Below, one piece after another: positions 8,735 to 42,854 of a stretch of DNA of 64,000 nucleotides (position 1 is its first letter; each line of letters starts with the position of its first letter). The notes beneath the pieces were generated by a model, which was not told where the DNA came from, ran no database searches, and saw nothing but the letters and a program-made list of their open reading frames with translations. The translations under genes and the position numbers were made by a program. The stretch covers positions 124,001-188,000 of the IMG/VR virus record IMGVR_UViG_3300037010_003311; one strand, written 5' to 3'.

Positions 8735-10660
8735 TTACATAATAATAAAGCTATTGAAATCGAAATCTTTGCTCGAACTTTTATTACGCTTAGCATCAAT
8801 TTTTTCAGCATGTGTTAGAGCTGAATCATCAGACTCATATATAATTTTATTTGCTCTGGATTTAACAACCAGGTTTTCATCTCTAGTTATAAGAGAGATA
8901 GATAAATAATCTTTTATATTTGCTGGGTTAAGCCCATATACTAATTGATTTTCTTCGATCTGTAAAATATTTTTCTTAATATTATATTTTCTTACCCAGA
9001 GTGTGAATCCGTAAGCTAAAACAACGTCATCATGTGAATTCTTACCTGCTTCGATTCTACCATTACGTTTATTCTCTAGGGTCCTAAGATCTTCTATTAA
9101 TAAGTCACCATGTATATATTCTGGATAAGTATTAACCATATACATAATTTCATTAAACATTTCATCCCGTTTACCACTACCTATATTTCCAGAATTGCTA
9201 GTATAGAAGCCATATACTATATCATCAGTATCACCAATGTGTTCTTTATACATATACTCGGAATAATCGAAAGCATCATATAATGGATCGGTATATAATA
9301 ATTCTTCTACTACTTCTTTACCAATACTATTTCTTTCGATAATAACTAAAAGATTCATTGGTGAAAGCTTATATTCAAGCGTTAAACCTTTAATACAACT
9401 TTTAAGTAGAGCCGCAAAACGTTTAACTACTGAAAACTTACCCTTCCATTCACCAACTTGTTGCCCAGATCTGGCATCTATTAAAACTAGAGCACTGAAA
9501 TCCGAATGTGGTCCAGCCGACATAGCGGTATCCACCCCTAGATAATATATTCCAAAAGGATCTAGTGGGGCAAATAGTTTAAATTTATTACCAAATGGTA
9601 ACACTAGTTCACTATCTGGTGTCTTAGCTATAAGTTTCATAATAACTTCATCTTCGAATAACGAAGTAGTTGAACCAAGGAAGTTAAGGTCAAGCTCTTG
9701 GTTAATTTTTCTGGTATCGAAGTTAAGTTCGCGTTTTTGTTCTTCATACCATTCTTGTGATCTAAATTCCGACCAATGTAATCTAAGACTAATGAAGTTA
9801 TTTCTTGACTTATCCCCTAACTCATCCATATAAGTTGGATATAGTTCTTTATTTTCATAATCGTATATATTATCAAAATGGGTACTGTTCTGATATATAT
9901 TATGGAAAAAGTTATCGCCGGCACCATTTGGAGTACTAGTAAATATAATACCATTTGGATAACCAAATTTTTTAGCAAAAATCTTAGCCGCAGAAATAGA
10001 TGGTTGCATAGCACCCCATACAGTTTGGGCATGTGGGATAAAAGCAGTTTCATCTATAAATACTAAGGGATTAGAAAGACCCCGACCTACCTTATCTGGA
10101 TCATTACTACCCGAAACAAAGCTAGCGGATATCTTACTACCATTCTTTAATTGTAAATAAGTTAACCTTTCCGCACTATTAGCATTTGGTACTTGTAACC
10201 AGATTGGTAAAGAATCCATCATCTCTTTCATACGGGAAATCATATCCAAAGCTCTCGTCTTATCCAGTGTTAAATAAGAAATTTGTAGTTTAGGGTAGAA
10301 TATCATACAATATAGTAAATAGAGGGCAGAAGTAGTTGTTTTACCTGATTGACGAGAACTCATATAAAGTACAGCATCATGCTGGTGAAACAGTTCTATT
10401 AATATTCTATACTTATTAGTGGAATTCCATTGTTCGGATTCCGCCATTGGAATACGTCCACCTGGTACCGGAATACTAATATAGTTTTCTATAAAATATA
10501 ATGGTGACATTTTACATTTGAACCATTCAATAGTTCTTTCATATGGGTTAAATGAATTTTTTTGTTTTTCAGTTAAGTAAGTATGTACTGGTAATGTATC
10601 AGTAGATTCTATAATTATTTCTGGATTAACGATTGAACGAATATCCTGTTTTCCAGACAT
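8735..10660 (-). CDS. terL: Terminase large subunit (T4 gp17-like)
   Basis: KCKMSPLYFIENY, Walker A SRQSGKTT, Walker B VFIDETAF, coupling motif TSTPNG, nuclease motifs LGVDTA and HDDVV. Confidence 0.95.
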   Translation of the reverse strand: MSGKQDIRSIVNPEIIIESTDTLPVHTYLTEKQKNSFNPYERTIEWFKCKMSPLYFIENYISIPVPGGRIPMAESEQWNSTNKYRILIELFHQHDAVLYMSSRQSGKTTTSALYLLYCMIFYPKLQISYLTLDKTRALDMISRMKEMMDSLPIWLQVPNANSAERLTYLQLKNGSKISASFVSGSNDPDKVGRGLSNPLVFIDETAFIPHAQTVWGAMQPSISAAKIFAKKFGYPNGIIFTSTPNGAGDNFFHNIYQNSTHFDNIYDYENKELYPTYMDELGDKSRNNFISLRLHWSEFRSQEWYEEQKRELNFDTRKINQELDLNFLGSTTSLFEDEVIMKLIAKTPDSELVLPFGNKFKLFAPLDPFGIYYLGVDTAMSAGPHSDFSALVLIDARSGQQVGEWKGKFSVVKRFAALLKSCIKGLTLEYKLSPMNLLVIIERNSIGKEVVEELLYTDPLYDAFDYSEYMYKEHIGDTDDIVYGFYTSNSGNIGSGKRDEMFNEIMYMVNTYPEYIHGDLLIEDLRTLENKRNGRIEAGKNSHDDVVLAYGFTLWVRKYNIKKNILQIEENQLVYGLNPANIKDYLSISLITRDENLVVKSRANKIIYESDDSALTHAEKIDAKRNKSSSKDFDFNSFIIM

Positions 10661-11071: not shown

Positions 11072-11118
11072 AATATCTTTATTTGAGCGACAGGAAAAGT
11101 TACTTAGGCCATGTGGCC
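11072..11118. repeat. 47-bp direct repeat, copy downstream of endonuclease gene
   Basis: AATATCTTTATTTGAGCGACAGGAAAAGTTACTTAGGCCATGTGGCC is identical to 12744-12790. Confidence 0.95.
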
Positions 11119-11120
11119 AT

Positions 11121-12686
11121 TTAATCTAATTTATATGTAATAGACCCGGAATCATAAATTATAGCAAATTTATTATCTATTATAGTTTGAAGTTCATTAT
11201 TTGTAGATAAATTTTTTTCAAAACCAAATTTAGTTTTATGATTTTGAAATTCTGATTCGGAAAATAAAACATTACTATTATTGAGATGCCAATAAAAAGG
11301 TTCTGGTTCATTAATTGTAAATTCTTTAAAACCCAGCGTTTTATATAAATTATCGTTATCCCAACGTCTATCTATAGTAGTTTTAATTGACCCAACATAT
11401 TTTTCTCTAAAATTATTTAGTAATTTGCTAGCAGCCTCTAGTATATTATAACCAAGTTTGTTACAAAATCTTACTAATAACCATTCGTTGTCATTATCTG
11501 AGTTATTAAAAACCATTAAACTCATTAATTCTGCATCTTTATATAAACCATACGCTAGTGTACAATTGGTATAACCTTGTAAATGGTTATATTCTAGAAA
11601 AGTTTTTGCTTCTAGCTTAGATACATTCTTAATTTTTAAATCATTAGCATCAAGTTTTATACCTTTATCTAAAGTACCAGTGATTATAGATTTCCAGATA
11701 TTTTGTTTAATTGGGTTAATCCATTCTGTTTCAAATATATGTAATAGTTTTATGCCTTTGCTTTGGCAGGCATTGGTCTTTTGTAAGTGCCTAGATTGAC
11801 ATGTATATAATTGAGTCTGTTTAGTACATGATGCTCTTTTCTCAGACATATAACTGTGCCAATAAATACCATTATATTCAATTGCTAGTTTATAGTCTGG
11901 TACGTAAATATCTAATTCGTATGGTTTAATAACATCTCTTATATTTTCTTGGATTAAACTTTCTGGGATATTTATTTTAATTATATCAAGTACCTGCTTT
12001 TCAGAAATACTAATAAATGATAACCGGTTATAATCAATTTTTAATTCTTTAATTTTTTGATGTGTCCTAGCTTCCGAACAATTGAAATAAGTTTGGCATT
12101 TGATATAATCAAATCGTTTATCTTTATCAAGAAACTCTTCTATCCAGAATTCTTTATTATTCCAATTTTCAAAATTTAATAAATGACTATTTTTAAAATG
12201 CGAGCTTCCATATTTTTCTAAATTTTTATCCCTCATTTTAGATTTGGATGCTTCTAGCATATTTGGGTGCTTAACTCCATATATAAAAAGACAGGTTTCC
12301 CTACGTTTTCGAATAACTTCCGGGTTACTGGCAGCACAATTATAACCGGTCCGTTCAAAATAAGTTTCTTTTGCCTTAATTCTGGTTTCTTTTATTTTAC
12401 TTGGGTGATTAACCCCATATTTTTGCATACAAGTATTAATAGTATTGGTTTGTTTAATCCGAGCTCTGATTTCTTTAGTATTTTGCTTACAATTGAGATG
12501 CCCACATGTTAAACCATATCCCCGAGTGGTAGTAAAGAACTTTCTTATATTATTACAATCCATATTCAAGCATTTTAAATTCTCCAGATTTAAATTAAAT
12601 TTAAACTGATATTTAATAGCTTGTTTAATATCTTTAATTGTAATATCTGGAAATTGTGTTAATAATTCTTCTTCGGTAATGGTCAA
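11121..12686 (-). CDS. Free-standing homing endonuclease-like protein (Hef-like): Zn finger + KYG repeats + PD-(D/E)xK domain + NHLQG C-terminal domain
   Basis: C-x4-C...C-x4-C; ~23-aa KYG/YG repeats; ELDIYVPDYKLAIEYNGIYWHS nuclease motif; C-terminal NHLQG...RFC...YDSG domain. Confidence 0.8.
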   Translation of the reverse strand: MTITEEELLTQFPDITIKDIKQAIKYQFKFNLNLENLKCLNMDCNNIRKFFTTTRGYGLTCGHLNCKQNTKEIRARIKQTNTINTCMQKYGVNHPSKIKETRIKAKETYFERTGYNCAASNPEVIRKRRETCLFIYGVKHPNMLEASKSKMRDKNLEKYGSSHFKNSHLLNFENWNNKEFWIEEFLDKDKRFDYIKCQTYFNCSEARTHQKIKELKIDYNRLSFISISEKQVLDIIKINIPESLIQENIRDVIKPYELDIYVPDYKLAIEYNGIYWHSYMSEKRASCTKQTQLYTCQSRHLQKTNACQSKGIKLLHIFETEWINPIKQNIWKSIITGTLDKGIKLDANDLKIKNVSKLEAKTFLEYNHLQGYTNCTLAYGLYKDAELMSLMVFNNSDNDNEWLLVRFCNKLGYNILEAASKLLNNFREKYVGSIKTTIDRRWDNDNLYKTLGFKEFTINEPEPFYWHLNNSNVLFSESEFQNHKTKFGFEKNLSTNNELQTIIDNKFAIIYDSGSITYKLD

Positions 12687-12743
12687 ACTAAATTCCTATA
12701 TATTTATTACTTTAATTATATACTAAAATTCTGAATAATAATA

Positions 12744-12790
12744 AATATCTTTATTTGAGCGACAGGAAAAGTTACTTAGGCCATGTGGCC
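12744..12790. repeat. 47-bp direct repeat, copy upstream of endonuclease gene
   Basis: Identical to 11072-11118. Confidence 0.95.
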
Positions 12791-20160: not shown

Positions 20161-22158
20161 CTAATTAGCTACGACGTCTAAACTTAACAATTCGTTATTA
20201 ATACTAATAACTATTTGTAAAGTAACTTTTACAAACATACCATTATCCTGACTAATAGGGGTAATAGATACTAAATTAAAATTAGCCGAATACAATATAT
20301 TTAGCTGTATTATAAATTGGCTAAGTTCTTCGGTTATGAAAGTTACATTAAATGCTTTAGTTTGTATAAACTGTTTAATATATGATTTAAAGCCACCACT
20401 AAATGGTACTATGTTTTCTGTTAACCGTAAGTATGTACCAAATTGTGTAACAAAGAACTCTTTAAAATTATAAATTTTATTGAAATGGCCTTGGTTAAGG
20501 TTTATATCCAATAATGAAGTTGTTTGTAATATATATGGTTCGGCTCTTTTATTATTACGGTTAATCTTATAGAAGAAAACCATTAGAATCTGGTTAAGAT
20601 CCGCAGCCGATATAACAGCGGTATCTATAAAATTAATAAGTGGCTTATAATTTTCATATGCTAAATCACTATTATCAATATTACCTTCCTTATCATATAA
20701 TAAGAACTTCTCTAATTCCTTACAATGATTATAACCAGATGTGATACTAATATTAAATATTGTATTACTATCTGGAGCATCTGGGAATAGGAAGCCAGGA
20801 GCATTCATAAAAAGCTTTTTGTAATCACTACCAATGTTTGTTTTATTATACTTGCGGTCGTAAGTTTCATCAAATATATAAACCTGATTACTAATACTTT
20901 GTACCGGAGCATTACTAGTCGCACCAAAACCATAAAATATACTATTGTTAAAACGGAACGATTTATCTATTTCTTTAACGATTATTGAACTAGTCTTATC
21001 TATAGAAACATTAAAGTAATGTCTCTTTTTATTAGTAATAATAAAATCTAAAAATAAAGGATCAATTTTTCGTTCGTGTGAAGATGTAAAGGTTTGATAA
21101 TAATAATAGTTATATGTTGAATTATACTTTATTGTATGATTTTGTAAATAATTATAATCTGGATTCTGTAAAATTTCTGGTTTGAAAACAGCTTCGGTTC
21201 TACAAATGTTTACCGATAATATTATATTTCTTATATCTGGACTAATTTCAATATCTAAAATATTAGAGTTGGTTAAATTATAATAGAAAATTATATCTTT
21301 ACTAATTGAGTTATCTCGGGCCGATAAAGCTACTTCATAAATAACTGGTTCGAGATTATCGTTTTCAATAAACACTTTATTGAACTCTAAATGTAAACGA
21401 TTTGGAAACTTAGTATATAATGAATCTGGTATATTGCTATTACGACAAGCCTTATAAAAAATTGGATGCAAATTAGAATTATCGCGAAAGAGTGAAAGTA
21501 TTCGATCTTTATAAAAATATAATTTATTAGCACTCTCTTTTACATAGCTATTAAACAGCATAAACCGGAGGCCAATCTCGTTTTGAATAGCTATTGGCAT
21601 TTCTGCTAGTAGTATTGATTCTTTATTATTAAAACTAGATACTGGAATAAAATCTTTTAAATTATAAGTAATATAATCATTTTGGGTAATATAAACATCA
21701 TTCTCGAAACTATTAATTCGCTCTTTATAATGTGCCAAATCTTTTAGGCTTAATGATAATAGAGCTGTACTGGTACCAGCGGATTCCCAACCAGGGACAC
21801 CAGTGTTAGAAACTGGTTCTTTATTAACGATTGGTAAAAAGTTAACCAAAGAACTATAATCCGGTATAGTAACAACTTGTTGAGGTTCTATCCCAGTCGC
21901 TAATGGGATAGCGACTGCTGGCGTATTTGGTTCAATTAATGGTTGAGCTTGGTTAAGATGTGTATTAACCGTAGTATCAAAATTATTAGATACCAATTCT
22001 GTTATAGTTAACCATTTTACAATCGGGGTTGTTTTTATTGATGTAGTTGGAAAGTACTGGTCGTGAAGGTTAACATTAATTGTACCAGATATAATATTAC
22101 TCAATTTAGTAATTAAGTAAATCTGTAAAAACCCTTGATTGGGCATTGTATTAGCCAT
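20161..22158 (-). CDS. Virion structural protein, possible C-terminal gp25-like domain
   Basis: 665 aa, first gene of the structural operon; the last ~100 aa (YLRLTENIVPFSGGF...) weakly resemble gp25. Confidence 0.4.
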   Translation of the reverse strand: MANTMPNQGFLQIYLITKLSNIISGTINVNLHDQYFPTTSIKTTPIVKWLTITELVSNNFDTTVNTHLNQAQPLIEPNTPAVAIPLATGIEPQQVVTIPDYSSLVNFLPIVNKEPVSNTGVPGWESAGTSTALLSLSLKDLAHYKERINSFENDVYITQNDYITYNLKDFIPVSSFNNKESILLAEMPIAIQNEIGLRFMLFNSYVKESANKLYFYKDRILSLFRDNSNLHPIFYKACRNSNIPDSLYTKFPNRLHLEFNKVFIENDNLEPVIYEVALSARDNSISKDIIFYYNLTNSNILDIEISPDIRNIILSVNICRTEAVFKPEILQNPDYNYLQNHTIKYNSTYNYYYYQTFTSSHERKIDPLFLDFIITNKKRHYFNVSIDKTSSIIVKEIDKSFRFNNSIFYGFGATSNAPVQSISNQVYIFDETYDRKYNKTNIGSDYKKLFMNAPGFLFPDAPDSNTIFNISITSGYNHCKELEKFLLYDKEGNIDNSDLAYENYKPLINFIDTAVISAADLNQILMVFFYKINRNNKRAEPYILQTTSLLDINLNQGHFNKIYNFKEFFVTQFGTYLRLTENIVPFSGGFKSYIKQFIQTKAFNVTFITEELSQFIIQLNILYSANFNLVSITPISQDNGMFVKVTLQIVISINNELLSLDVVAN

Positions 22159-22245
22159 AAATCACCATCCATATAAAATTACCAATTTGTTTTTGTATAG
22201 AAATTTGGTACAGTTTGGTCTCTGCCATTACTTCGATCGCAGATG

Positions 22246-22270
22246 AAAGATTTTTTTAACGACATGAAAA
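22246..22270. repeat. 25-bp direct repeat downstream of endonuclease pair
   Basis: AAAGATTTTTTTAACGACATGAAAA, 24/25 identical to 24903-24927. Confidence 0.85.
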
Positions 22271-22293
22271 AGTTGGGCCACCTGGACCACAAC

Positions 22294-23601
22294 TTAATCT
22301 ATTTTAAAAACAAAATTACCGGAATCAAAAATAGCTTTATAACCATTAAGGTCTATAACTAGTTCTTTTTCAGTTAAATTTTCTTTATATACTTCAAGCT
22401 TTGTTTCAAGCTTATGTTTTTGGAAACTCTGTCGACTATGAAGTTTTGGTAAATTGTAATTATCAGTAATGTCTTCTCGCCAATAAAAATAATTTGGCTC
22501 AGCAACCTTTTCTTCATGGAATCCAATCTGTCTATATAAGTTTCCTTCTGACCAACGCCTATTTGCATATGATTTAATACTACCTGTATATTTAGCTTTG
22601 AATGCTTTGAGTAACCTGCTTGCACCACCTACTACACTATAACCTTTTGCATTACAAAACCGCATAAGCTCCCAATCTGTATTCTTATCAAATCGGCTTT
22701 TACTAAATGTCATAATAGATACTAATTCTTTTTGGTAGAATAAAGCAAATCGAATAAGTGCTTTACCAGTTCCTTGCAAGTGGTTACTTTCAACGAACTG
22801 ATTGCTTATTTTTAATAAACCTTTATGAGCCCGGTTGCTAGAATCAATCTCTATAATATCACATTTCCGAGCATAAATTCTATTAGATAAACCAAGAGCA
22901 TTTATTATCATGCTTTTCCAAATAAGTTGTTTGTTAGGATGTAGCCATTCTATATCATACATATATAGTACTTTTATACCAGTTTCAAGGCCACGATTAG
23001 TTGTATTCAAAAAATTATTTTTTTTGGATTTAAGATTACTTCTGGCTTCGATAATTGATTCGGCATTTGGAGTGATTGGGGTAAGCTTAGTAGCTAATTC
23101 TTTACTAATAAGGCTATCATTCAATAACTCGACTATTACTATCGAAACTTGTTGGTCTGGGAAATATATATCATTATCTAAAATATTAGCCTTATCACCA
23201 GCTAATACATAGTTAAATGATCTAGCCTCCAGCCACTGTACAATACTAGCAATAATAGTTTTTTTATTATTATATGTAGCCTCAGCTGGTAGAATATTTG
23301 GGATGGTTGGTACCTCTGGTTCCACAGCTTGAGTTATATGTTTCTTTTTAGATATAGTATTTACAATTTTAGTGATTTTCATATCTTTAATAGTACTAGC
23401 CATTTTAGCTTGGCAAGAATCACTACAGCAATATTTAAAACCAGCATCCGAATTTTTCCAAGCTTTTAAATTACCGCAATCCGGATTAATGCATTCTAAA
23501 TTATCTAAAGTTAATTGGAACTTATCCTTGTATTTTAGAATTCGTTTTATATTGAATTTATCTATGTTTGGATAATACTCTTTAAGTGTCGCTTCCGTCA
23601 T
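22294..23601 (-). CDS. Hef-like endonuclease paralog with degenerate nuclease motif
   Basis: Likely start ATG 23601 (AAGGGA RBS, 1 nt after the upstream stop). Shared N-terminal Zn-finger domain, no KYG repeats, DNDIYFPDQQVSIVIVELL in place of the nuclease motif, complete NHLQG domain. Confidence 0.75.
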   Translation of the reverse strand: MTEATLKEYYPNIDKFNIKRILKYKDKFQLTLDNLECINPDCGNLKAWKNSDAGFKYCCSDSCQAKMASTIKDMKITKIVNTISKKKHITQAVEPEVPTIPNILPAEATYNNKKTIIASIVQWLEARSFNYVLAGDKANILDNDIYFPDQQVSIVIVELLNDSLISKELATKLTPITPNAESIIEARSNLKSKKNNFLNTTNRGLETGIKVLYMYDIEWLHPNKQLIWKSMIINALGLSNRIYARKCDIIEIDSSNRAHKGLLKISNQFVESNHLQGTGKALIRFALFYQKELVSIMTFSKSRFDKNTDWELMRFCNAKGYSVVGGASRLLKAFKAKYTGSIKSYANRRWSEGNLYRQIGFHEEKVAEPNYFYWREDITDNYNLPKLHSRQSFQKHKLETKLEVYKENLTEKELVIDLNGYKAIFDSGNFVFKID

Positions 23602-23602
23602 T

Positions 23603-24790
23603 TTATCCCTTTTTAATTTTGAGTTCGTGTGGGTCATCTGTTCGCAGCTGTAATTGTCCAGAATCATATACCTGGAATTGAGTAGATTCAGTTTTAATTT
23701 TTGGCTCAATTATTAAATATTCTTCTAGGTTTATAGATTCTAGATAGCACCCATCGTCCAAAACATATGAAAAAGCCACTTCCGTAGCCCTTGGTTCTAA
23801 TTTAAATTTTATTGCATTCTGGATTTTAGAAATATTTTTTTCATAAGTATCTGTTTCATAAAGGTGTACTAAGCTAATACCAGCAGCAATACAAGCTAAT
23901 GATTTCTGCTGATGGTAGTACTTATCTGTACCAGCTTCAGTACTATGCCAATATAAACCATTATATTCCACGGCAAGTTTTAATGCCGGAATATAAATAT
24001 CCAACTCTAGTGGTTTAATTATGCTACGGTTGTTAGTATTGACCTCGTAGCCTAGTTCTTGTATGTAGCTAGCAAGCTGCTGCTCTTTTAAGCTGGAACC
24101 TTTAAACTTTTTATATTGTATGTTTAATCGCTTAGCTCTTTGCCATAAATGACCAGAGGTACAATTAAAGTGGTTCATACATTTTTCAATATTTAAATAA
24201 CCATCAACCATTAAAAAGTTTTCTGCCCAATATTTAGCATCATCCCAATGTACAAAGTTAGTAATATGCTTATTTAGATGGTTTTTACCAGCACCATATT
24301 TATTAGAGTTTGTATCTTTTGCTTTCAATATTGCTTCTGGATTCGAGGTAGTATGTTCATAACCAGTTCTAGTTAAATAAGTTTGTTTAGCTTTTAATCT
24401 GGTTTCTTTAATTTTACTAGGATGTTCAACTCCATAATTTTTAAGAGATGTTAATTTCTTCTTCTCTTTAATTAATGGGCTACAGCTATTGTATTCAAAT
24501 CCAAATCGTTTGAGGTTAGTAGCTTTTTGTTTAGAAAACATTATTTCTAAAATTTTGGGCTTAGAAACATTTTTACAAATGTCGCTACCACAAGTATGAC
24601 CGAATCCTTGCGTAGAATTTTGCCACTTCCGTAACAAACCGCAACTAGGATTAATACATTTAATATTGGCTACAGTATATTGGAACTTAGTTTGGTATTT
24701 GATGGATCGTTTCAAATCTATTAGCTTGGCATCAGGGAATTGGGCTCGTAACATTTCTAGGGTTAATGACATTGTTACAGAATCTGACAT
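23603..24790 (-). CDS. Homing endonuclease-like protein (Zn finger + KYG repeats + PD-(D/E)xK), short C-terminus
   Basis: ELDIYIPALKLAVEYNGLYWHS; lacks the NHLQG domain. Confidence 0.8.
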   Translation of the reverse strand: MSDSVTMSLTLEMLRAQFPDAKLIDLKRSIKYQTKFQYTVANIKCINPSCGLLRKWQNSTQGFGHTCGSDICKNVSKPKILEIMFSKQKATNLKRFGFEYNSCSPLIKEKKKLTSLKNYGVEHPSKIKETRLKAKQTYLTRTGYEHTTSNPEAILKAKDTNSNKYGAGKNHLNKHITNFVHWDDAKYWAENFLMVDGYLNIEKCMNHFNCTSGHLWQRAKRLNIQYKKFKGSSLKEQQLASYIQELGYEVNTNNRSIIKPLELDIYIPALKLAVEYNGLYWHSTEAGTDKYYHQQKSLACIAAGISLVHLYETDTYEKNISKIQNAIKFKLEPRATEVAFSYVLDDGCYLESINLEEYLIIEPKIKTESTQFQVYDSGQLQLRTDDPHELKIKKG

Positions 24791-24827
24791 ATATTTCCTT
24801 ACTAGAATATTGTTACAATCTACCTTT

Positions 24828-24838
24828 ATATTTCTATA
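24828..24838 (-). promoter_or_regulatory. TATAGAAATAT promoter-like motif (also 10883-10893, 41238-41248, 42263-42273, 44084-44094, 57027-57037, 63553-63563; plus-strand copy 8660-8670)
   Basis: Conserved 11-mer overlapping a TAnnAT -10-like hexamer, mostly 27-43 nt upstream of start codons. Confidence 0.65.
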
Positions 24839-24902
24839 CTAATTAAAATAGTACTGGGACTATAAACTGTAACAATATCCCTGTCGTAGGTGTTGCTAAA
24901 TA

Positions 24903-24927
24903 AAAGATTTTTTTAACGACAGGAAAA
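24903..24927. repeat. 25-bp direct repeat upstream of endonuclease pair
   Basis: AAAGATTTTTTTAACGACAGGAAAA. Confidence 0.85.
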
Positions 24928-24953
24928 TTTTAGAGGCTTACGCCTCTAAAATT
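24917..24953 (-). terminator. Intrinsic terminator after major capsid gene
   Basis: AATTTTAGAGGC-GTAA-GCCTCTAAAATT stem with GNRA loop, then TTCCTGTCG. Confidence 0.8.
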
Positions 24954-26607
24954 ATTGTTGCATTGTAGCAGAACCAGTATCTAGTGTTGATACAGCGTTA
25001 TTATCTGGTGTAGATAATTCACCGAAGTAAGTAACTCCAGATGTTTGACCTAGTGAATCATAGTTGAATCCTGAGATTCCAGTAATTTTGATTGTAGCAA
25101 TACCTTCAGAACGAACAATACCAATCCAGTTTCTTGATTTGATGAAAGTACGGTTGATAGAGTTTGTAACCTCGCGAATTACATAGAATGGTTTATGAGA
25201 CACTTCCAAAATTGTACTTTGGCTTAATGTTTCAGATTTTGTTACAAGGTGGATTAAATCATCAGCTACCGCAAATGATGAAATGATTTGTAACTTAGCG
25301 AAATCACCAGTTGTACCATTTTGACCCATTTCTCCAACAGCACCAGAAAATTTCATTGTAAATTCTTGAAGAGATTTCAATAATGCAGCTGCTTTAATTC
25401 CACAGATAACATAAGAGAATTCTAAACGAGTGTTTTTACGTACAATTTCTTGTAGCATTGTAATTACTGGTAAAATGTTTTTGAAGATATCAGCAAATGA
25501 TCTAGGGTTAGTACCGAAGTCAGCTTTGATTTTTGAAAAATCGACTTCTGCATAGTGACCAAATTTTTTAGCTGATGGAATGTTTGTTTCCAAAAGTTCA
25601 GCAATTTCATAATCTTTGTTCAATTTCATTTGATCTTTTACATAATCTTTTACTTGAGCAATGATATCTAGATTGTAAAGTGATTTCCAATCTTGGATGA
25701 TTTCTTCAATGTTTTCGATTTCGAAAGAATCTTCAACGTCTGCATTGATATCGATCATTGATTGTTCTGGTCTTGCTTTAACAACACCTTTACCATTACC
25801 AACACCAAAGATACGTGTACGGAAAGTAATTGAACCAGTTGTAACTGTTCCAAGGAAAGAGATATTTACTATACCATAAGTAACTTGACCATTATCAAAG
25901 TTTACTGAACCAGAAACACGGATAACACCAAGAGAACCACCATTAGCATCAGTTAAAGTAATATCTTCATCAAAATTACCACGAGCATCAGCAATAATGA
26001 TAACAGCCATATCATGTTGAGTATCTGTAGTACCATCATTAGTTGTGAAAGTGATGTTAGTTATTTTGAAATTTCTTTTATTGATACGGAATTGATCAAC
26101 ATTAGTTGTAATACCAGCCAAAGTGAAAAGATTTGAAACAGCTTTATAAGAAACTAGTGTAACATAACCAGGACGAACGATTTGGTTAGCATTTGGGAAG
26201 TAAACTTTAGTTTCAGCGCCATCAAGACCAATAATTTTAGCAGTCCATTTAAGACGTGGAATAGACATTATTGGTTTATCAGATGGATAAACTGTAACAG
26301 CTTGGCTTAATAGAGGCTCTGCATAAATATCAAGTAGCATAGGGAAAGATGTTACTGAATAAGAGATCGCTTCAGGTGATCCCAACATTGTTGTACCCTC
26401 TTCGATAATCATTTGACGTTGACGATCAAAAAGTGATTGGAAGAATGGTTTTTGACTCTCTTCAAAACCTTCTAAAAGCTTTTGAGTATAAGACTCATAA
26501 TACATATCATCAGTAATTACTGATGTTGATGTTAATGCATCATCAAAAATAACAGAGTTATCAGCAACGAATGCACCAAAGTTTTCTAAAATTAGACCTT
26601 CTTGCAT
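24952..26607 (-). CDS. Major capsid protein (distant T4 gp23 / HK97 fold)
   Basis: 551 aa immediately downstream of the prohead protease; strongly biased codons; IEEIIQDWKSLYNLD matches the gp23 E..QDL.A..G.D motif; followed by a strong terminator. Confidence 0.87.
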   Translation of the reverse strand: MQEGLILENFGAFVADNSVIFDDALTSTSVITDDMYYESYTQKLLEGFEESQKPFFQSLFDRQRQMIIEEGTTMLGSPEAISYSVTSFPMLLDIYAEPLLSQAVTVYPSDKPIMSIPRLKWTAKIIGLDGAETKVYFPNANQIVRPGYVTLVSYKAVSNLFTLAGITTNVDQFRINKRNFKITNITFTTNDGTTDTQHDMAVIIIADARGNFDEDITLTDANGGSLGVIRVSGSVNFDNGQVTYGIVNISFLGTVTTGSITFRTRIFGVGNGKGVVKARPEQSMIDINADVEDSFEIENIEEIIQDWKSLYNLDIIAQVKDYVKDQMKLNKDYEIAELLETNIPSAKKFGHYAEVDFSKIKADFGTNPRSFADIFKNILPVITMLQEIVRKNTRLEFSYVICGIKAAALLKSLQEFTMKFSGAVGEMGQNGTTGDFAKLQIISSFAVADDLIHLVTKSETLSQSTILEVSHKPFYVIREVTNSINRTFIKSRNWIGIVRSEGIATIKITGISGFNYDSLGQTSGVTYFGELSTPDNNAVSTLDTGSATMQQ

Positions 26608-26778: not shown

Positions 26779-27594
26779 TTAGATTTTAAAACGAATTGCG
26801 TTGGCTTTACTATTTTTACTATTATCATTCAAAGTTCTAAACAATGAATCTATTAAAAAAGTAGTTGTTTCTTCAAGAGTACCTTTAATACAAGATGTAC
26901 CATCGCAAACAACTCTTTCACCTTTACTATTAACTGGAAAATACCCAAGATTTGAACTCTCAAGTAATACTTCAGAGCTAACAATCTCTTGTTTCATGCG
27001 GTTTAAGTTACTAATCTGTTTAAGCAGATTTGTACTCTCGTCGAAGAATTCAGTAATAACAGCATTACTATGACTTGGATTACTAACGACGTCAAAGGTT
27101 AAAGCTTTAAGACCTTTACCATCAACAATAACTGTACCATTTGGTTGAGTCGTCCCAGCTCCAAATGCTCTTAGGCTAAAACCAATACCAATTTTATCTT
27201 TCAATAAACGATAAAGATTCATTCCTGGATCATTAGTTAGTGTTTCACAATCAGCAACAATAAATTTACCATCAAATGTCAGATTAGTATAAACAATACA
27301 AGCATCTTTCAATCTAATAGTACTAGAACGTTTCATTCTTGACTCAAAATCTCCTTGTGGAGTTGGATGATCCATTTCACCAAGAAGTTTTCTTTCTAAG
27401 GCTTTTTGCTGTAATTGATCAATTATAGTTTGGAGTGCAAAAGATGTGTACATTCTACCATTATTATTAAGTACATTGGCTTCTTGCAAATATGCTCGAA
27501 ATCTAAGTTTAAATGCATTACCTACTTGGGATTCTTCTAATAGAGTAATTTTCGTAGGGACATAACTCTGTTCCTGGATTAAATCTATTTTCAT
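26779..27594 (-). CDS. Prohead core protease (T4 gp21-like)
   Basis: N.NGRMY, LGEMDHP, GFSLRAFG and TFDVVSNPSH catalytic motifs. Confidence 0.92.
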   Translation of the reverse strand: MKIDLIQEQSYVPTKITLLEESQVGNAFKLRFRAYLQEANVLNNNGRMYTSFALQTIIDQLQQKALERKLLGEMDHPTPQGDFESRMKRSSTIRLKDACIVYTNLTFDGKFIVADCETLTNDPGMNLYRLLKDKIGIGFSLRAFGAGTTQPNGTVIVDGKGLKALTFDVVSNPSHSNAVITEFFDESTNLLKQISNLNRMKQEIVSSEVLLESSNLGYFPVNSKGERVVCDGTSCIKGTLEETTTFLIDSLFRTLNDNSKNSKANAIRFKI

Positions 27595-42336: not shown

Positions 42337-42402
42337 CGACAGGAAAACTTGCGACTACTAACATAAAGTGAGGAGACAATATGTTAGCAGTTGCAAGTTT
42401 TC
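42337..42402 (-). terminator. Terminator of tRNA transcript with C/U-rich loop
   Basis: ~22-bp stem, loop TTGTCTCCTCACTT, ending TTTTCCTGTCG. Confidence 0.75.
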
Positions 42403-42410
42403 AATATTAA

Positions 42411-42486
42411 TGGTGGAGAATAGCGGGGTCGAACCGCTGACCTACTGCTTGCAAGGCAGTCGCTCTCCCAACTGAGCTAATTCCCC
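42411..42486 (-). tRNA. tRNA-Ala(TGC)
   Basis: GGGGAAT TA GCTC..GAGC G ACTGC CT TGC AA GCAGT..AGCGG TTCGACC CCGCT ATTCTCC A CCA; G3-U70 pair; encoded CCA. Confidence 0.97.
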
Positions 42487-42778: not shown

Positions 42779-42854
42779 TGGATCGGAGTGGAGGGTTCGA
42801 ACCTCCGACACGCAGCGCCAAAAGCTGCTGTTCTACCAACTGAACTAACTCCGA
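42779..42854 (-). tRNA. tRNA-Gln(TTG)
   Basis: TCGGAGT TA GTTC..GAAC A GCAGC TT TTG GC GCTGC..GGAGG TTCGAAC CCTCC ACTCCGA T CCA; U1-A72 pair. Confidence 0.93.

What the first reader, a model, noticed from the sequence alone, without database searches (positions are those of the whole stretch)
22246..24953. Second case: endonuclease pair after the capsid terminator is flanked by a 25-bp duplication of the same terminator tail
Seen: 22246-22270 and 24903-24927 match at 24/25 positions and again span the CGACAGGAAAA motif plus its downstream flank. The downstream copy has only a weak hairpin. Two separate insertions of one gene family both duplicate a terminator tail. Inference: this family targets the conserved terminator motif as a safe harbour behind highly expressed late genes.
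Basis: partly seen in the sequence, partly recalled or inferred. Interest (0 to 1): 0.65.

Follow-up and report, generated by a model that had tools for sequence, protein, structure and literature searches.

The report
Endonuclease cassette bracketed by terminator copies
In an uncultivated jumbo phage, two selfish homing-endonuclease genes sit just behind the capsid gene between two copies of a conserved terminator element, which looks like recombination at a shared regulatory signal and not like an enzyme that targets that signal.

Summary
22243-22270 and 24900-24927 match at 26 of 28 positions; simulated sequence gave at most 21.

On the coding (minus) strand the repeat is the 3' tail of a genome-wide element: a variable RNA hairpin followed by TTTTCCTGTCG. 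The 227-kb phage genome has about 17 copies.

Between the two copies lie a TATAGAAAT promoter-like site and two Hef-like (Vsr/EDxHD-type) homing endonuclease genes. A has an intact nuclease motif. B has a degenerate one.

- **Relatives:** three have an empty site. Two of these carry one element and one carries two elements with no gene between. Another relative has B alone between two elements.
- **Same genome:** two more endonuclease genes of this family and two unrelated small genes are bracketed by near-identical neighbouring elements. Three other family members have no element nearby.
- **More distant relatives:** their slot behind the capsid gene holds 0, 1 or 2 endonuclease genes, although their tail motif differs or is missing there. 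All post-capsid endonucleases form one clade.

[quoted passage not shown] is therefore supported. "The family targets the motif" is not.

The best reading is a locus-specific homing endonuclease in a self-contained cassette whose edges are recombination-prone regulatory elements, like the PeSL elements of T4-type phages. The step that made the duplicate is unresolved.

The parts
24952..26607 (-). Major capsid protein gene (551 aa), the gene whose terminator is duplicated
   Evidence: Pfam Gp23 weak match (E 1.5e-4). PHROG 20655 major head protein (3e-8). 73-79% identical homologues in metagenomes. A prohead protease gene lies just upstream at 26779-27594.
24928..24951 (-). Upstream hairpin (12-bp perfect stem, GUAA loop) that starts right after the capsid stop codon
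   Evidence: Sequence. RNA fold -16.5 kcal/mol, z -6.2.
24917..24927 (-). Conserved tail TTTTCCTGTCG, upstream copy
   Evidence: The 10-mer TTTCCTGTCG occurs 15 times in the genome (13 on the minus strand, 2 on the plus). The reversed control pattern occurs 0 times.
24900..24927 (-). Upstream copy of the 28-nt direct repeat (tail plus TTAAAAAAATCTTTTAT)
   Evidence: the repeat finder family D2, 26/28. Alignment.
24830..24838 (-). TATAGAAAT promoter-like motif in the spacer upstream of ORF A
   Evidence: The motif occurs 22 times on the minus strand and 8 on the plus, upstream of many genes. It is also present upstream of the B-type gene in L002. Function is inferred.
23603..24790 (-). ORF A, 395 aa. 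Hef-like homing endonuclease, short form: zinc-finger N-terminus, DUF7487 and an intact Vsr/EDxHD-like nuclease motif (ELDIYIP...AVEYNGLYWHS); no C-terminal domain
   Evidence: Pfam DUF7487 5e-13 and MTES_1575 3.8e-4. PHROG 3339 homing endonuclease 9.6e-48, profile positions 137-354. Alignment A1. The family profile matches the I-Bth0305I nuclease 3R3P at E 0.0013.
22294..23601 (-). ORF B, 435 aa from the ATG at 23601 (1 nt after A's stop). Hef-like derivative: zinc-finger N-terminus and the C-terminal NHLQG (GNAT-like) domain; DUF7487 missing and the catalytic NGxYWH motif degenerate
   Evidence: PHROG 3339 1.1e-65, profile positions 307-533. No Pfam hit. Alignment A1. A gene with the same architecture sits at the same site in L002 (44% identity). 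The two form a clade at 99/98.
22270..22295 (-). Downstream hairpin (bulged, weaker) that overlaps B's stop codon
   Evidence: Fold -10.1 kcal/mol and -13.2 kcal/mol, z -2.45. No other copy in the genome.
22260..22270 (-). Tail, downstream copy, variant TTTTCATGTCG (1 mismatch)
22243..22270 (-). Downstream copy of the 28-nt direct repeat
22183..22192 (-). AAACAAATTG promoter-like motif ahead of the next gene
   Evidence: The motif AAACAAATWG occurs 8 times on the minus strand and 0 on the plus. AACAAATTAG sits in the same position at the empty sites of L005, L012 and L004.
20161..22158 (-). Next resident gene (665 aa, unknown function). It follows the capsid gene directly in relatives with an empty site
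   Evidence: Orthologues in L004, L005 and L012 directly after the capsid gene.
11072..12790 (-).

Best explanation
**What the repeat is.** The 28-nt repeat is part of a regulatory element that marks the ends of transcription units in this jumbo phage clade. On the minus-strand transcript it is a variable RNA hairpin followed by the conserved tail UUUUCCUGUCG. A promoter-like or ribosome-binding sequence often follows.

**What lies between the copies.** The interval holds a self-contained cassette: a TATAGAAAT promoter-like site, ORF A, ORF B, then the cassette's own hairpin and tail. It is inserted between the capsid terminator and the promoter of the next gene.

**Why it is at this site.** B belongs to an old lineage of Hef-like homing endonucleases tied to the post-capsid slot. 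Free-standing homing endonucleases usually sit beside the conserved gene they cut. A is a later arrival of a different sub-lineage. Its insertion added no further element.

**Where the second tail came from.** I infer that it arose, and stays similar to its neighbour, through recombination at these conserved elements. That could be unequal exchange, circle excision and integration, or gene conversion, as proposed for PeSL elements of T4-type phages. I do not think it comes from an endonuclease that recognises the motif. The second copy also insulates the cassette and restores a terminator-then-promoter context for the next gene.

**Shown:** the anatomy, the genome-wide element, empty and occupied alleles, cargo that is not an endonuclease, and the locus-specific clade.

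**Inferred:** that the hairpin and tail terminate transcription, what the endonuclease cuts, and which recombination step made the duplicate.
For: - **Element:** about 17 copies of hairpin plus tail, oriented with transcription. G-U wobble changes keep the stems paired only in the sense RNA.
- **Empty sites:** L005 and L012 have one element. L004 has two elements 52 nt apart with no gene between. L002/L013 has B alone between two elements.
- **Neighbour similarity:** among all 136 element pairs, the five neighbouring pairs share the longest identity beyond the core (49, 38, 36, 20 and 17 nt). Three bracket endonuclease genes and two bracket other small ORFs.
- **Same slot, different cargo:** the slot before the terminase gene holds an endonuclease here and in L013. 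In L011 it holds a small unrelated gene between two elements, and that gene's family sits elsewhere in this genome.
- **Family members without elements:** three loci in this genome.
- **Distant clade:** the post-capsid slot holds 0, 1 or 2 endonuclease genes, and the TTTTCCTGTCG tail is replaced by a different sequence or absent.
- **Clade:** all post-capsid endonucleases group together at 95/95.
- **Neighbours of the family:** capsid, large terminase and RNA polymerase beta-like genes. This is the known pattern for phage homing endonuclease genes (PMC10448857). Hef of phage U5 cuts the neighbouring nrdB gene (PMC2988022).
- **Precedent:** PeSL elements (PMC2839356, PMC4122927).
Against: - Three of the five neighbouring near-identical pairs bracket members of one family that makes up only 7 of roughly 300 genes. 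Some link between endonuclease insertion and duplication therefore remains likely.
- In cases 1 and 3 the duplicate includes the locus-specific hairpin. A cassette arriving from another locus by exchange in the tail would not produce that.
- In three pairs the duplicate begins inside the 5' arm of the hairpin. No model I have predicts this.
- In the relatives, neighbouring elements are not homogenised (L002, L004, L011). Conversion is therefore not universal.
- PeSL elements carry sigma-70-like early promoters, which these elements lack.
Confidence: 0.55

Rival explanations
1. Endonucleases of this family recognise and cut the conserved terminator element, and insertion at a staggered break duplicates the tail like a target-site duplication. 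The motif would be a safe harbour behind highly expressed late genes.
For: - Three of six loci of the family in this genome lie directly behind an element and are followed by a near-identical copy.
- L002 shows the same arrangement.
- In cases 1 and 3 the downstream copy is a 47-49-nt copy of the resident element cut off inside the hairpin arm. That looks like a duplicated target.
- Removing one copy plus the cargo gives the architecture of the empty sites.
Against: - Three loci of the family have no element.
- Pairs around genes that are not endonucleases exist.
- Repeat lengths vary: 28, 47, 49 and 60 nt.
- All motif copies in the genome are intact, so the enzyme would cut its own genome.
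- The distant clade holds endonuclease genes in the same slot although the TTTTCCTGTCG tail is replaced by a different sequence or absent there.
- The post-capsid endonucleases form a locus-specific clade.
- A's arrival next to B added no duplicate.
- Known Hef and EDxHD enzymes cut coding sequence and leave no duplication (PMC2988022, PMC3239194).
Confidence: 0.12
2. No duplication happened at this locus. The cassette simply has its own terminator, and the two tails look alike because every terminator in this clade must carry the same functional tail and a similar A-rich spacer.
For: - 17 of the 28 nt (TTTTCCTGTCGTTAAAA) are shared by the orthologous elements of L002 and, nearly, L005.
- The two hairpins are unrelated.
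- B has been at this site since before the split from the L002 lineage (44% identity, same architecture). A relic of the original insertion should have decayed by now.
- One non-neighbouring pair shares 15 nt beyond the core through a common promoter-like motif.
Against: - Beyond the 17 consensus bases, 10 of the remaining 11 positions of the repeat match, and 11 of 13 in the same register if one counts two bases further, although this stretch is not conserved in any relative.
- This pair still ranks fifth of 136, and the four above it are also neighbouring pairs.
- The 28-nt repeat exceeds every simulation.
Confidence: 0.18
3. The duplicates are by-products of illegitimate, one-sided double-strand-break repair. 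The endonuclease cuts in or near the neighbouring conserved gene or the hairpin. One end copies the donor's element and endonuclease gene, and the new strand rejoins the other broken end by microhomology inside the hairpin. The result is a full upstream element and a truncated downstream one.
For: - In cases 1 and 3 and in one other pair the downstream copy starts inside the 5' arm. Upstream hairpins fold at -21 to -22 kcal/mol and downstream ones at -7 to -14.
- Homing with homology on one side only, joined at microhomologies, is documented for T4 introns (Parker et al. 1999, as summarised in PMC2988022).
- In L017 an endonuclease gene is flanked by a duplicated promoter segment (21/22), not by a terminator tail. 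Whatever lies at the junction seems to get duplicated.
Against: - The pair at 225034/224555 has the same truncated-arm geometry and no endonuclease gene.
- Case 2 has different hairpins.
- There are no donor or recipient pairs with which to test it.
Confidence: 0.15

Closest known systems
PeSL (promoter-early stem-loop) mobile regulatory cassettes of T4-type phages (Arbiol et al. 2010, PMC2839356; Comeau et al. 2014, PMC4122927)
   Same: - Short conserved composite regulatory motifs with a terminator stem-loop.
- Many dispersed copies oriented with transcription.
- They bracket genes that are present or absent between related phages.
- Different cargo occupies the same slot in different phages.
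- Tandem or neighbouring copies occur.
   Different: - Here the conserved part is an 11-nt tail 3' of a variable hairpin, not a sigma-70-like early promoter.
- The elements lie in the late structural region beside core genes (capsid, terminase), not in hyperplastic regions.
- The main cargo is homing endonuclease genes.
- Circular intermediates are untested here.
- The host phage is an uncultivated jumbo phage that encodes an RNA polymerase beta-like protein.
Free-standing Hef-like / EDxHD (Vsr-like) homing endonucleases (Hef of phage U5; I-Bth0305I, PDB 3R3P, PMC3239194; review PMC2988022)
   Same: - A carries the Vsr-like motif, and the family profile matches 3R3P.
- The genes are free-standing, sit next to conserved essential genes, and are present or absent among relatives.
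- Phage records annotate homologues as 'Hef-like homing endonuclease'.
   Different: - This family has an N-terminal four-cysteine zinc finger, DUF7487 repeats and a GNAT-like C-terminal domain, not NUMOD/HTH modules.
- B has lost the catalytic motif yet is conserved.
- No cleavage data exist.
- I found no description of flanking duplicated terminators for Hef in the papers I could read.
Clustering of homing endonuclease genes beside essential phage genes (Barth et al. 2023, PMC10448857)
   Same: Family members sit next to capsid, terminase and polymerase genes, and they mark places where gene content differs between relatives.
   Different: That study covers T5orf172 and HNH families and does not describe duplicated terminator elements.
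SegB-driven segmental amplification in phage T6 (PMC13096335)
   Same: A homing endonuclease locus where short homologies at the cassette edges give duplicated units.
   Different: That case is tandem amplification of the whole unit under selection from a defence system. This one is a single cassette between short regulatory repeats.

Membership tests
Hef-like / EDxHD (Vsr-like) homing endonuclease | Vsr-like nuclease domain with the conserved catalytic residues | tested here: met
   For ORF A: ELDIYIP...AVEYNGLYWHS aligns with full-length members. The A1 family profile matches the I-Bth0305I nuclease 3R3P at E 0.0013 over this motif. Pfam MTES_1575 is below its cut-off (3.8e-4). PHROG 3339 'homing endonuclease' scores 9.6e-48.
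Hef-like / EDxHD (Vsr-like) homing endonuclease | The same catalytic motif in ORF B | tested here: not met
   B and its L002 counterpart lack NGxYWH and DUF7487. Only a degenerate DIYFP...VIVELLNDS stretch remains, read by eye from the B row. B does match the C-terminal half of PHROG 3339 (1.1e-65). It is a relative by descent, probably not an active nuclease of this type.
Hef-like / EDxHD (Vsr-like) homing endonuclease | Free-standing gene beside a conserved gene, present or absent among related genomes | tested here: met
   Empty site in L004, L005, L012, L014 and L018. Occupied site here and in L002, L016, L017 and L019.
Hef-like / EDxHD (Vsr-like) homing endonuclease | Site-specific cleavage of the allele that lacks the endonuclease, and biased inheritance in co-infection | not testable with these tools
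   Needs protein and a cultured phage-host pair.
PeSL-type mobile regulatory cassette | Dispersed conserved motif containing a terminator stem-loop, oriented with transcription | tested here: met
   About 17 elements. Hairpins fold at -10 to -22 kcal/mol in 15 of 17. The 10-mer occurs 15 times and the reversed control 0 times.
PeSL-type mobile regulatory cassette | Motif includes a strong sigma-70-like early promoter | tested here: not met
   No sigma-70-like site above background (18 found, 16.2 expected). Instead AAACAAATWG (8 of 17 elements) or a ribosome-binding site follows the tail.
PeSL-type mobile regulatory cassette | Elements flank genes that differ between related phages; different cargo in the same slot | tested here: met
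   Post-capsid and pre-terminase slots.
PeSL-type mobile regulatory cassette | Recombination between flanking copies gives circles or deletions | not testable with these tools
Transposon-like insertion with target-site duplication | Fixed-length duplication and a transposase or integrase in the insert | tested here: not met
   Repeat lengths are 28, 47, 49 and 60 nt. The inserts encode only Hef-like proteins.
Intrinsic (factor-independent) terminator | Stable hairpin immediately followed by a U-tract | tested here: inconclusive
   The hairpin is present, but only 4 U precede CCUGUCG, and the simple scan did not report it. No data on RNA 3' ends.

The most novel reading that the evidence does not exclude
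The hairpin-plus-TTTTCCTGTCG element is itself the insertion site of a transposon-like form of homing endonuclease mobility. The endonuclease (or the phage recombination machinery acting on the extruded hairpin) breaks the DNA inside the 5' arm, and the cassette is copied in with a 28-60-nt duplication. Endonuclease cassettes could then hop between any of the roughly 17 terminator sites and between diverged phages that share only the tail.
Probability: 0.1. Interest if true: 0.75.

Novelty: new variant of a known kind. Interest (0 to 1): 0.42.

Why it matters
This would extend the PeSL idea, that conserved regulatory motifs serve as portable homology for gene shuffling, in three ways:
- to an unrelated, uncultivated jumbo phage clade;
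- to the late structural region, beside core genes;
- to homing endonuclease genes as the main cargo.

It also gives a concrete, testable picture of how selfish endonuclease genes settle beside core genes without disturbing their expression: an insulated cassette with its own terminator copy.

Separately, it flags an unusually strict 11-nt terminator tail. What recognises it (the phage polymerase, a processing enzyme, or something else) is unknown.

For annotation, it warns against reading flanking repeats of a conserved regulatory motif as target-site duplications.

Tried and rejected
**Searches that gave nothing**
- Megablast of 20161-26607 against phage records: no match.
- tblastn of the capsid protein against phage records: only distant Staphylococcus jumbo phages, no use for empty alleles.
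- IMG/VR scan with the capsid protein: a single distant relative, L001.
- Metagenome scan with the gene X protein, to find empty alleles for case 3: nothing.
- Rfam over the whole window: only two tRNAs, no family for the element.
- Single-sequence search of ORF C against solved structures: nothing. Only the family profile reached 3R3P.
- Simple terminator scan: does not report the elements, because the U-tract is short.
- blastn-short of the downstream hairpin and both spacers against the genome: no donor locus. Only shared promoter-like motifs appeared.
- The paper on Hef and SegH (PMC1275590) is not held. What I say about Hef's target rests on the review PMC2988022.

**Ideas considered and rejected**
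- That A and B are a recent tandem duplicate. Their zinc fingers are only 43% identical, and A groups with D and H2.
- That the inverted CCCTGTCG at 24879-24886 is a third element. Its count fits chance.

**Not run:** structure and complex predictions. No claim in this report rests on a fold or on A binding B.
Full report
**Setting.** The window is bases 124001-188000 of a single 226,657-bp virus contig with 31.9% G+C, rated 81% complete. Nearly all genes in the window run on the minus strand. The contig encodes a gp23-like capsid protein, a prohead protease, a large terminase and an RNA polymerase beta-like protein. It is therefore an uncultivated jumbo phage. Its closest capsid homologues are 73-79% identical and come from metagenomes.

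**The observation.** The repeat is real. 22243-22270 and 24900-24927 match at 26/28. Simulated sequence gave at most 21.

Read on the coding strand:
- The upstream copy follows the capsid stop codon and a perfect 12-bp hairpin (-16.5 kcal/mol, z -6.2).
- The downstream copy follows ORF B's stop and a bulged hairpin (-13.2 kcal/mol, z -2.45).

**The element.** The shared core TTTTCCTGTCG is not special to this locus. The genome has about 17 copies of 'variable hairpin plus TTT(T)CCTGTCG', oriented with transcription. The 10-mer occurs 15 times and its reversed control never.

Hairpin sequences differ between loci, but G-U wobble changes keep them paired in the sense RNA. The element therefore acts at the RNA level, most likely as a terminator or processing site.

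The tail is often followed within 3-4 nt by AAACAAATWG (8 on the minus strand, 0 on the plus) or by a ribosome-binding site. A second promoter-like motif, TATAGAAAT, occurs 22 times on the minus strand and 8 on the plus.

**The genes.**
- **ORF A (23603-24790)** and **ORF B (22294-23601 from its ATG)** both match PHROG 3339 'homing endonuclease'. They match complementary halves of the profile: A positions 137-354, B positions 307-533.
- **Full-length members** have a four-cysteine zinc finger, DUF7487, a Vsr-like nuclease (ELDIYxP...AIEYNGxYWHS) and a C-terminal NHLQG domain.
- **Family assignment.** The family profile matches the I-Bth0305I nuclease domain (3R3P, E 0.0013) and, weakly, a GNAT fold. 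Phage records call homologues 'Hef-like homing endonuclease'. The literature places Hef enzymes in the Vsr-like family (PMC3239194).
- **A versus B.** A keeps the catalytic motif but lacks the C-terminal domain. B lacks DUF7487 and the NGxYWH motif.

**The family in this genome.** There are seven genes at six loci.
- The other three (H1, H2 just after the RNA polymerase beta-like gene, and D) sit in tight operons with no element.

**Neighbouring elements resemble each other whatever the cargo.** Among all 136 pairs of elements, the five neighbouring pairs are exactly the five with the longest identity beyond the core: 49, 38, 36, 20 and 17 nt. Two of them bracket small ORFs that are not endonucleases.

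In three pairs the duplicate begins inside the 5' arm of the hairpin. The upstream hairpin is then full (-21 to -22 kcal/mol) and the downstream one weakened (-7 to -14).

**Relatives, close clade (capsid 73-79% identical).**
- L005 and L012 have capsid, one element and then the orthologue of the 665-aa gene. This is the empty site.
- L004 has no endonuclease but two elements 52 nt apart.
- L002/L003/L013 has a B-type gene alone (44% identical, same architecture) between two elements. Those two share only ACTTTTCCTGTCGTTAAAA.

Removing one repeat plus the cargo from this genome reproduces the empty architecture: tail, spacer, AACAAATWG, gene.

Because B predates the split from the L002 lineage, the extra identity here (10 of the 11 repeat positions beyond the locus consensus) is probably younger than the insertion itself.

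**The slot before the terminase gene (case 1).** L013 has a 522-aa endonuclease there, with an upstream element only. L011 has a small unrelated gene between two elements. Homologues of that gene form a three-gene tandem family elsewhere in this genome, and one member of it is itself bracketed by a 59/60 pair.

**Relatives, distant clade (capsid 49-54% identical).** The slot between the capsid gene and gene X holds:
- no endonuclease gene in L014 and L018;
- one in L017 and L019;
- two in L016 (the same contig as L001).

The tail there is a different sequence in L014, L018 and L019 (TTCTTGTC-like) and absent in L016 and L017. In L017 the endonuclease gene is flanked by a duplicated promoter segment, TACTATAGAAATAATAA (21/22).

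**Phylogeny.** In a tree of the C-terminal domain, all post-capsid endonucleases (B, L002-B, both L016 genes, L017) form one group at 95/95, apart from C, L013, HEG3 and H1. A groups with D and H2 at 97/97.

**Interpretation.**
- **Placement.** The site of the cassette is best explained by ordinary homing endonuclease biology. A lineage stays tied to a slot beside a conserved gene (PMC2988022, PMC10448857), and the spacer between terminator and promoter is the spot that tolerates an insert.
- **The second tail.** It belongs to a self-contained cassette. The element family behaves like PeSL elements (PMC2839356, PMC4122927): conserved regulatory sequences that bracket variable cargo and recombine with their neighbours.
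- **Still open.** Why endonuclease genes are the commonest cargo, and why duplicates start inside the hairpin arm. One-sided break repair joined at microhomology is a live rival.

**Limits.**
- There are no close relatives (over 80% capsid identity), no reads and no transcripts.
- Terminator function, endonuclease activity and target are inferred.
- The contig is a metagenome assembly. Repeats of 28-60 nt are shorter than typical reads and should not cause misassembly; this is my judgement, not a test.

Noticed in passing
G000:C1:120491-121954 (about 2-3.5 kb before the window start; locus L008): A third Hef-like gene (466 aa, genome 120528-121925) lies between two 49-nt copies of hairpin, GTTTCCTGTCG and a ribosome-binding site (48/49). 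Its ATG is 16 nt after the tail, so it uses the duplicated ribosome-binding site.
   Followed up: yes
window 22183-22192 and genome-wide: AAACAAATWG occurs 8 times, all on the minus strand. It usually lies 3-4 nt after the tail, which makes many elements composite terminator-promoter units. It loosely resembles the AACA(N6)TW late promoter of phage AR9; that comparison is from memory and untested.
   Followed up: partly
window 24830-24838 and genome-wide: TATAGAAAT occurs 22 times on the minus strand and 8 on the plus, upstream of many genes, including ORF A, the terminase gene and gene X. The related AACATAGAAAT precedes each gene in L001. This is probably a second promoter class.
   Followed up: partly
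L004:11640-11727 (same region as L011:3633-3720): Two complete elements with different hairpins lie 52 nt apart behind the capsid gene, with no gene between. This could be a double terminator or the footprint of a lost cassette.
   Followed up: partly
window 22294-24790; L002:9282-10493: A and B are complementary partial forms of the full-length protein, and each has its own zinc finger. The B form, which lacks the nuclease motif, is conserved at the same site in another phage. It may be a domesticated DNA-binding protein or a partner of an A-type nuclease.
   Followed up: partly
L017:7573-7627 and 9330-9409; L018:7724-7848: In the distant clade the palindrome CGATCTTTAAAGATCG recurs 2-4 times in the spacer between the capsid gene and gene X. 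It looks like an operator. One copy plus the promoter is duplicated in front of the L017 endonuclease gene.
   Followed up: partly
G000:C1:224555-226108 (locus L010); L011:13160-13640: Three tandem paralogues share a nearly identical 47-aa N-terminus and have unrelated glycine-rich C-termini. One is bracketed by a 59/60 element pair. A homologue sits in the slot before the terminase gene in L011.
   Followed up: partly
window 24879-24886 (+): An inverted partial copy of the core (CCCTGTCG) lies 30 nt from the upstream tail and could pair with it in RNA. Genome-wide counts of antisense CCTGTCG fit chance.
   Followed up: yes
G000:C1:83931-87039 (locus L007): A short-form Hef-like gene (H2) overlaps the end of an RNA polymerase beta-like gene (Pfam Rpb2 domain 6, 1.8e-23). 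The phage therefore appears to encode a multisubunit RNA polymerase.
   Followed up: no
window 42337-42486 and 42782-42854: Two tRNA genes lie on the minus strand. An element copy with almost no hairpin (-2.2 kcal/mol) lies 66 nt downstream of the first tRNA.
   Followed up: no
L013:14800-14860: The endonuclease gene before the terminase gene in this relative has no downstream element. Only TCGTCGTTAA is present, which may be a decayed remnant of the tail.
   Followed up: no
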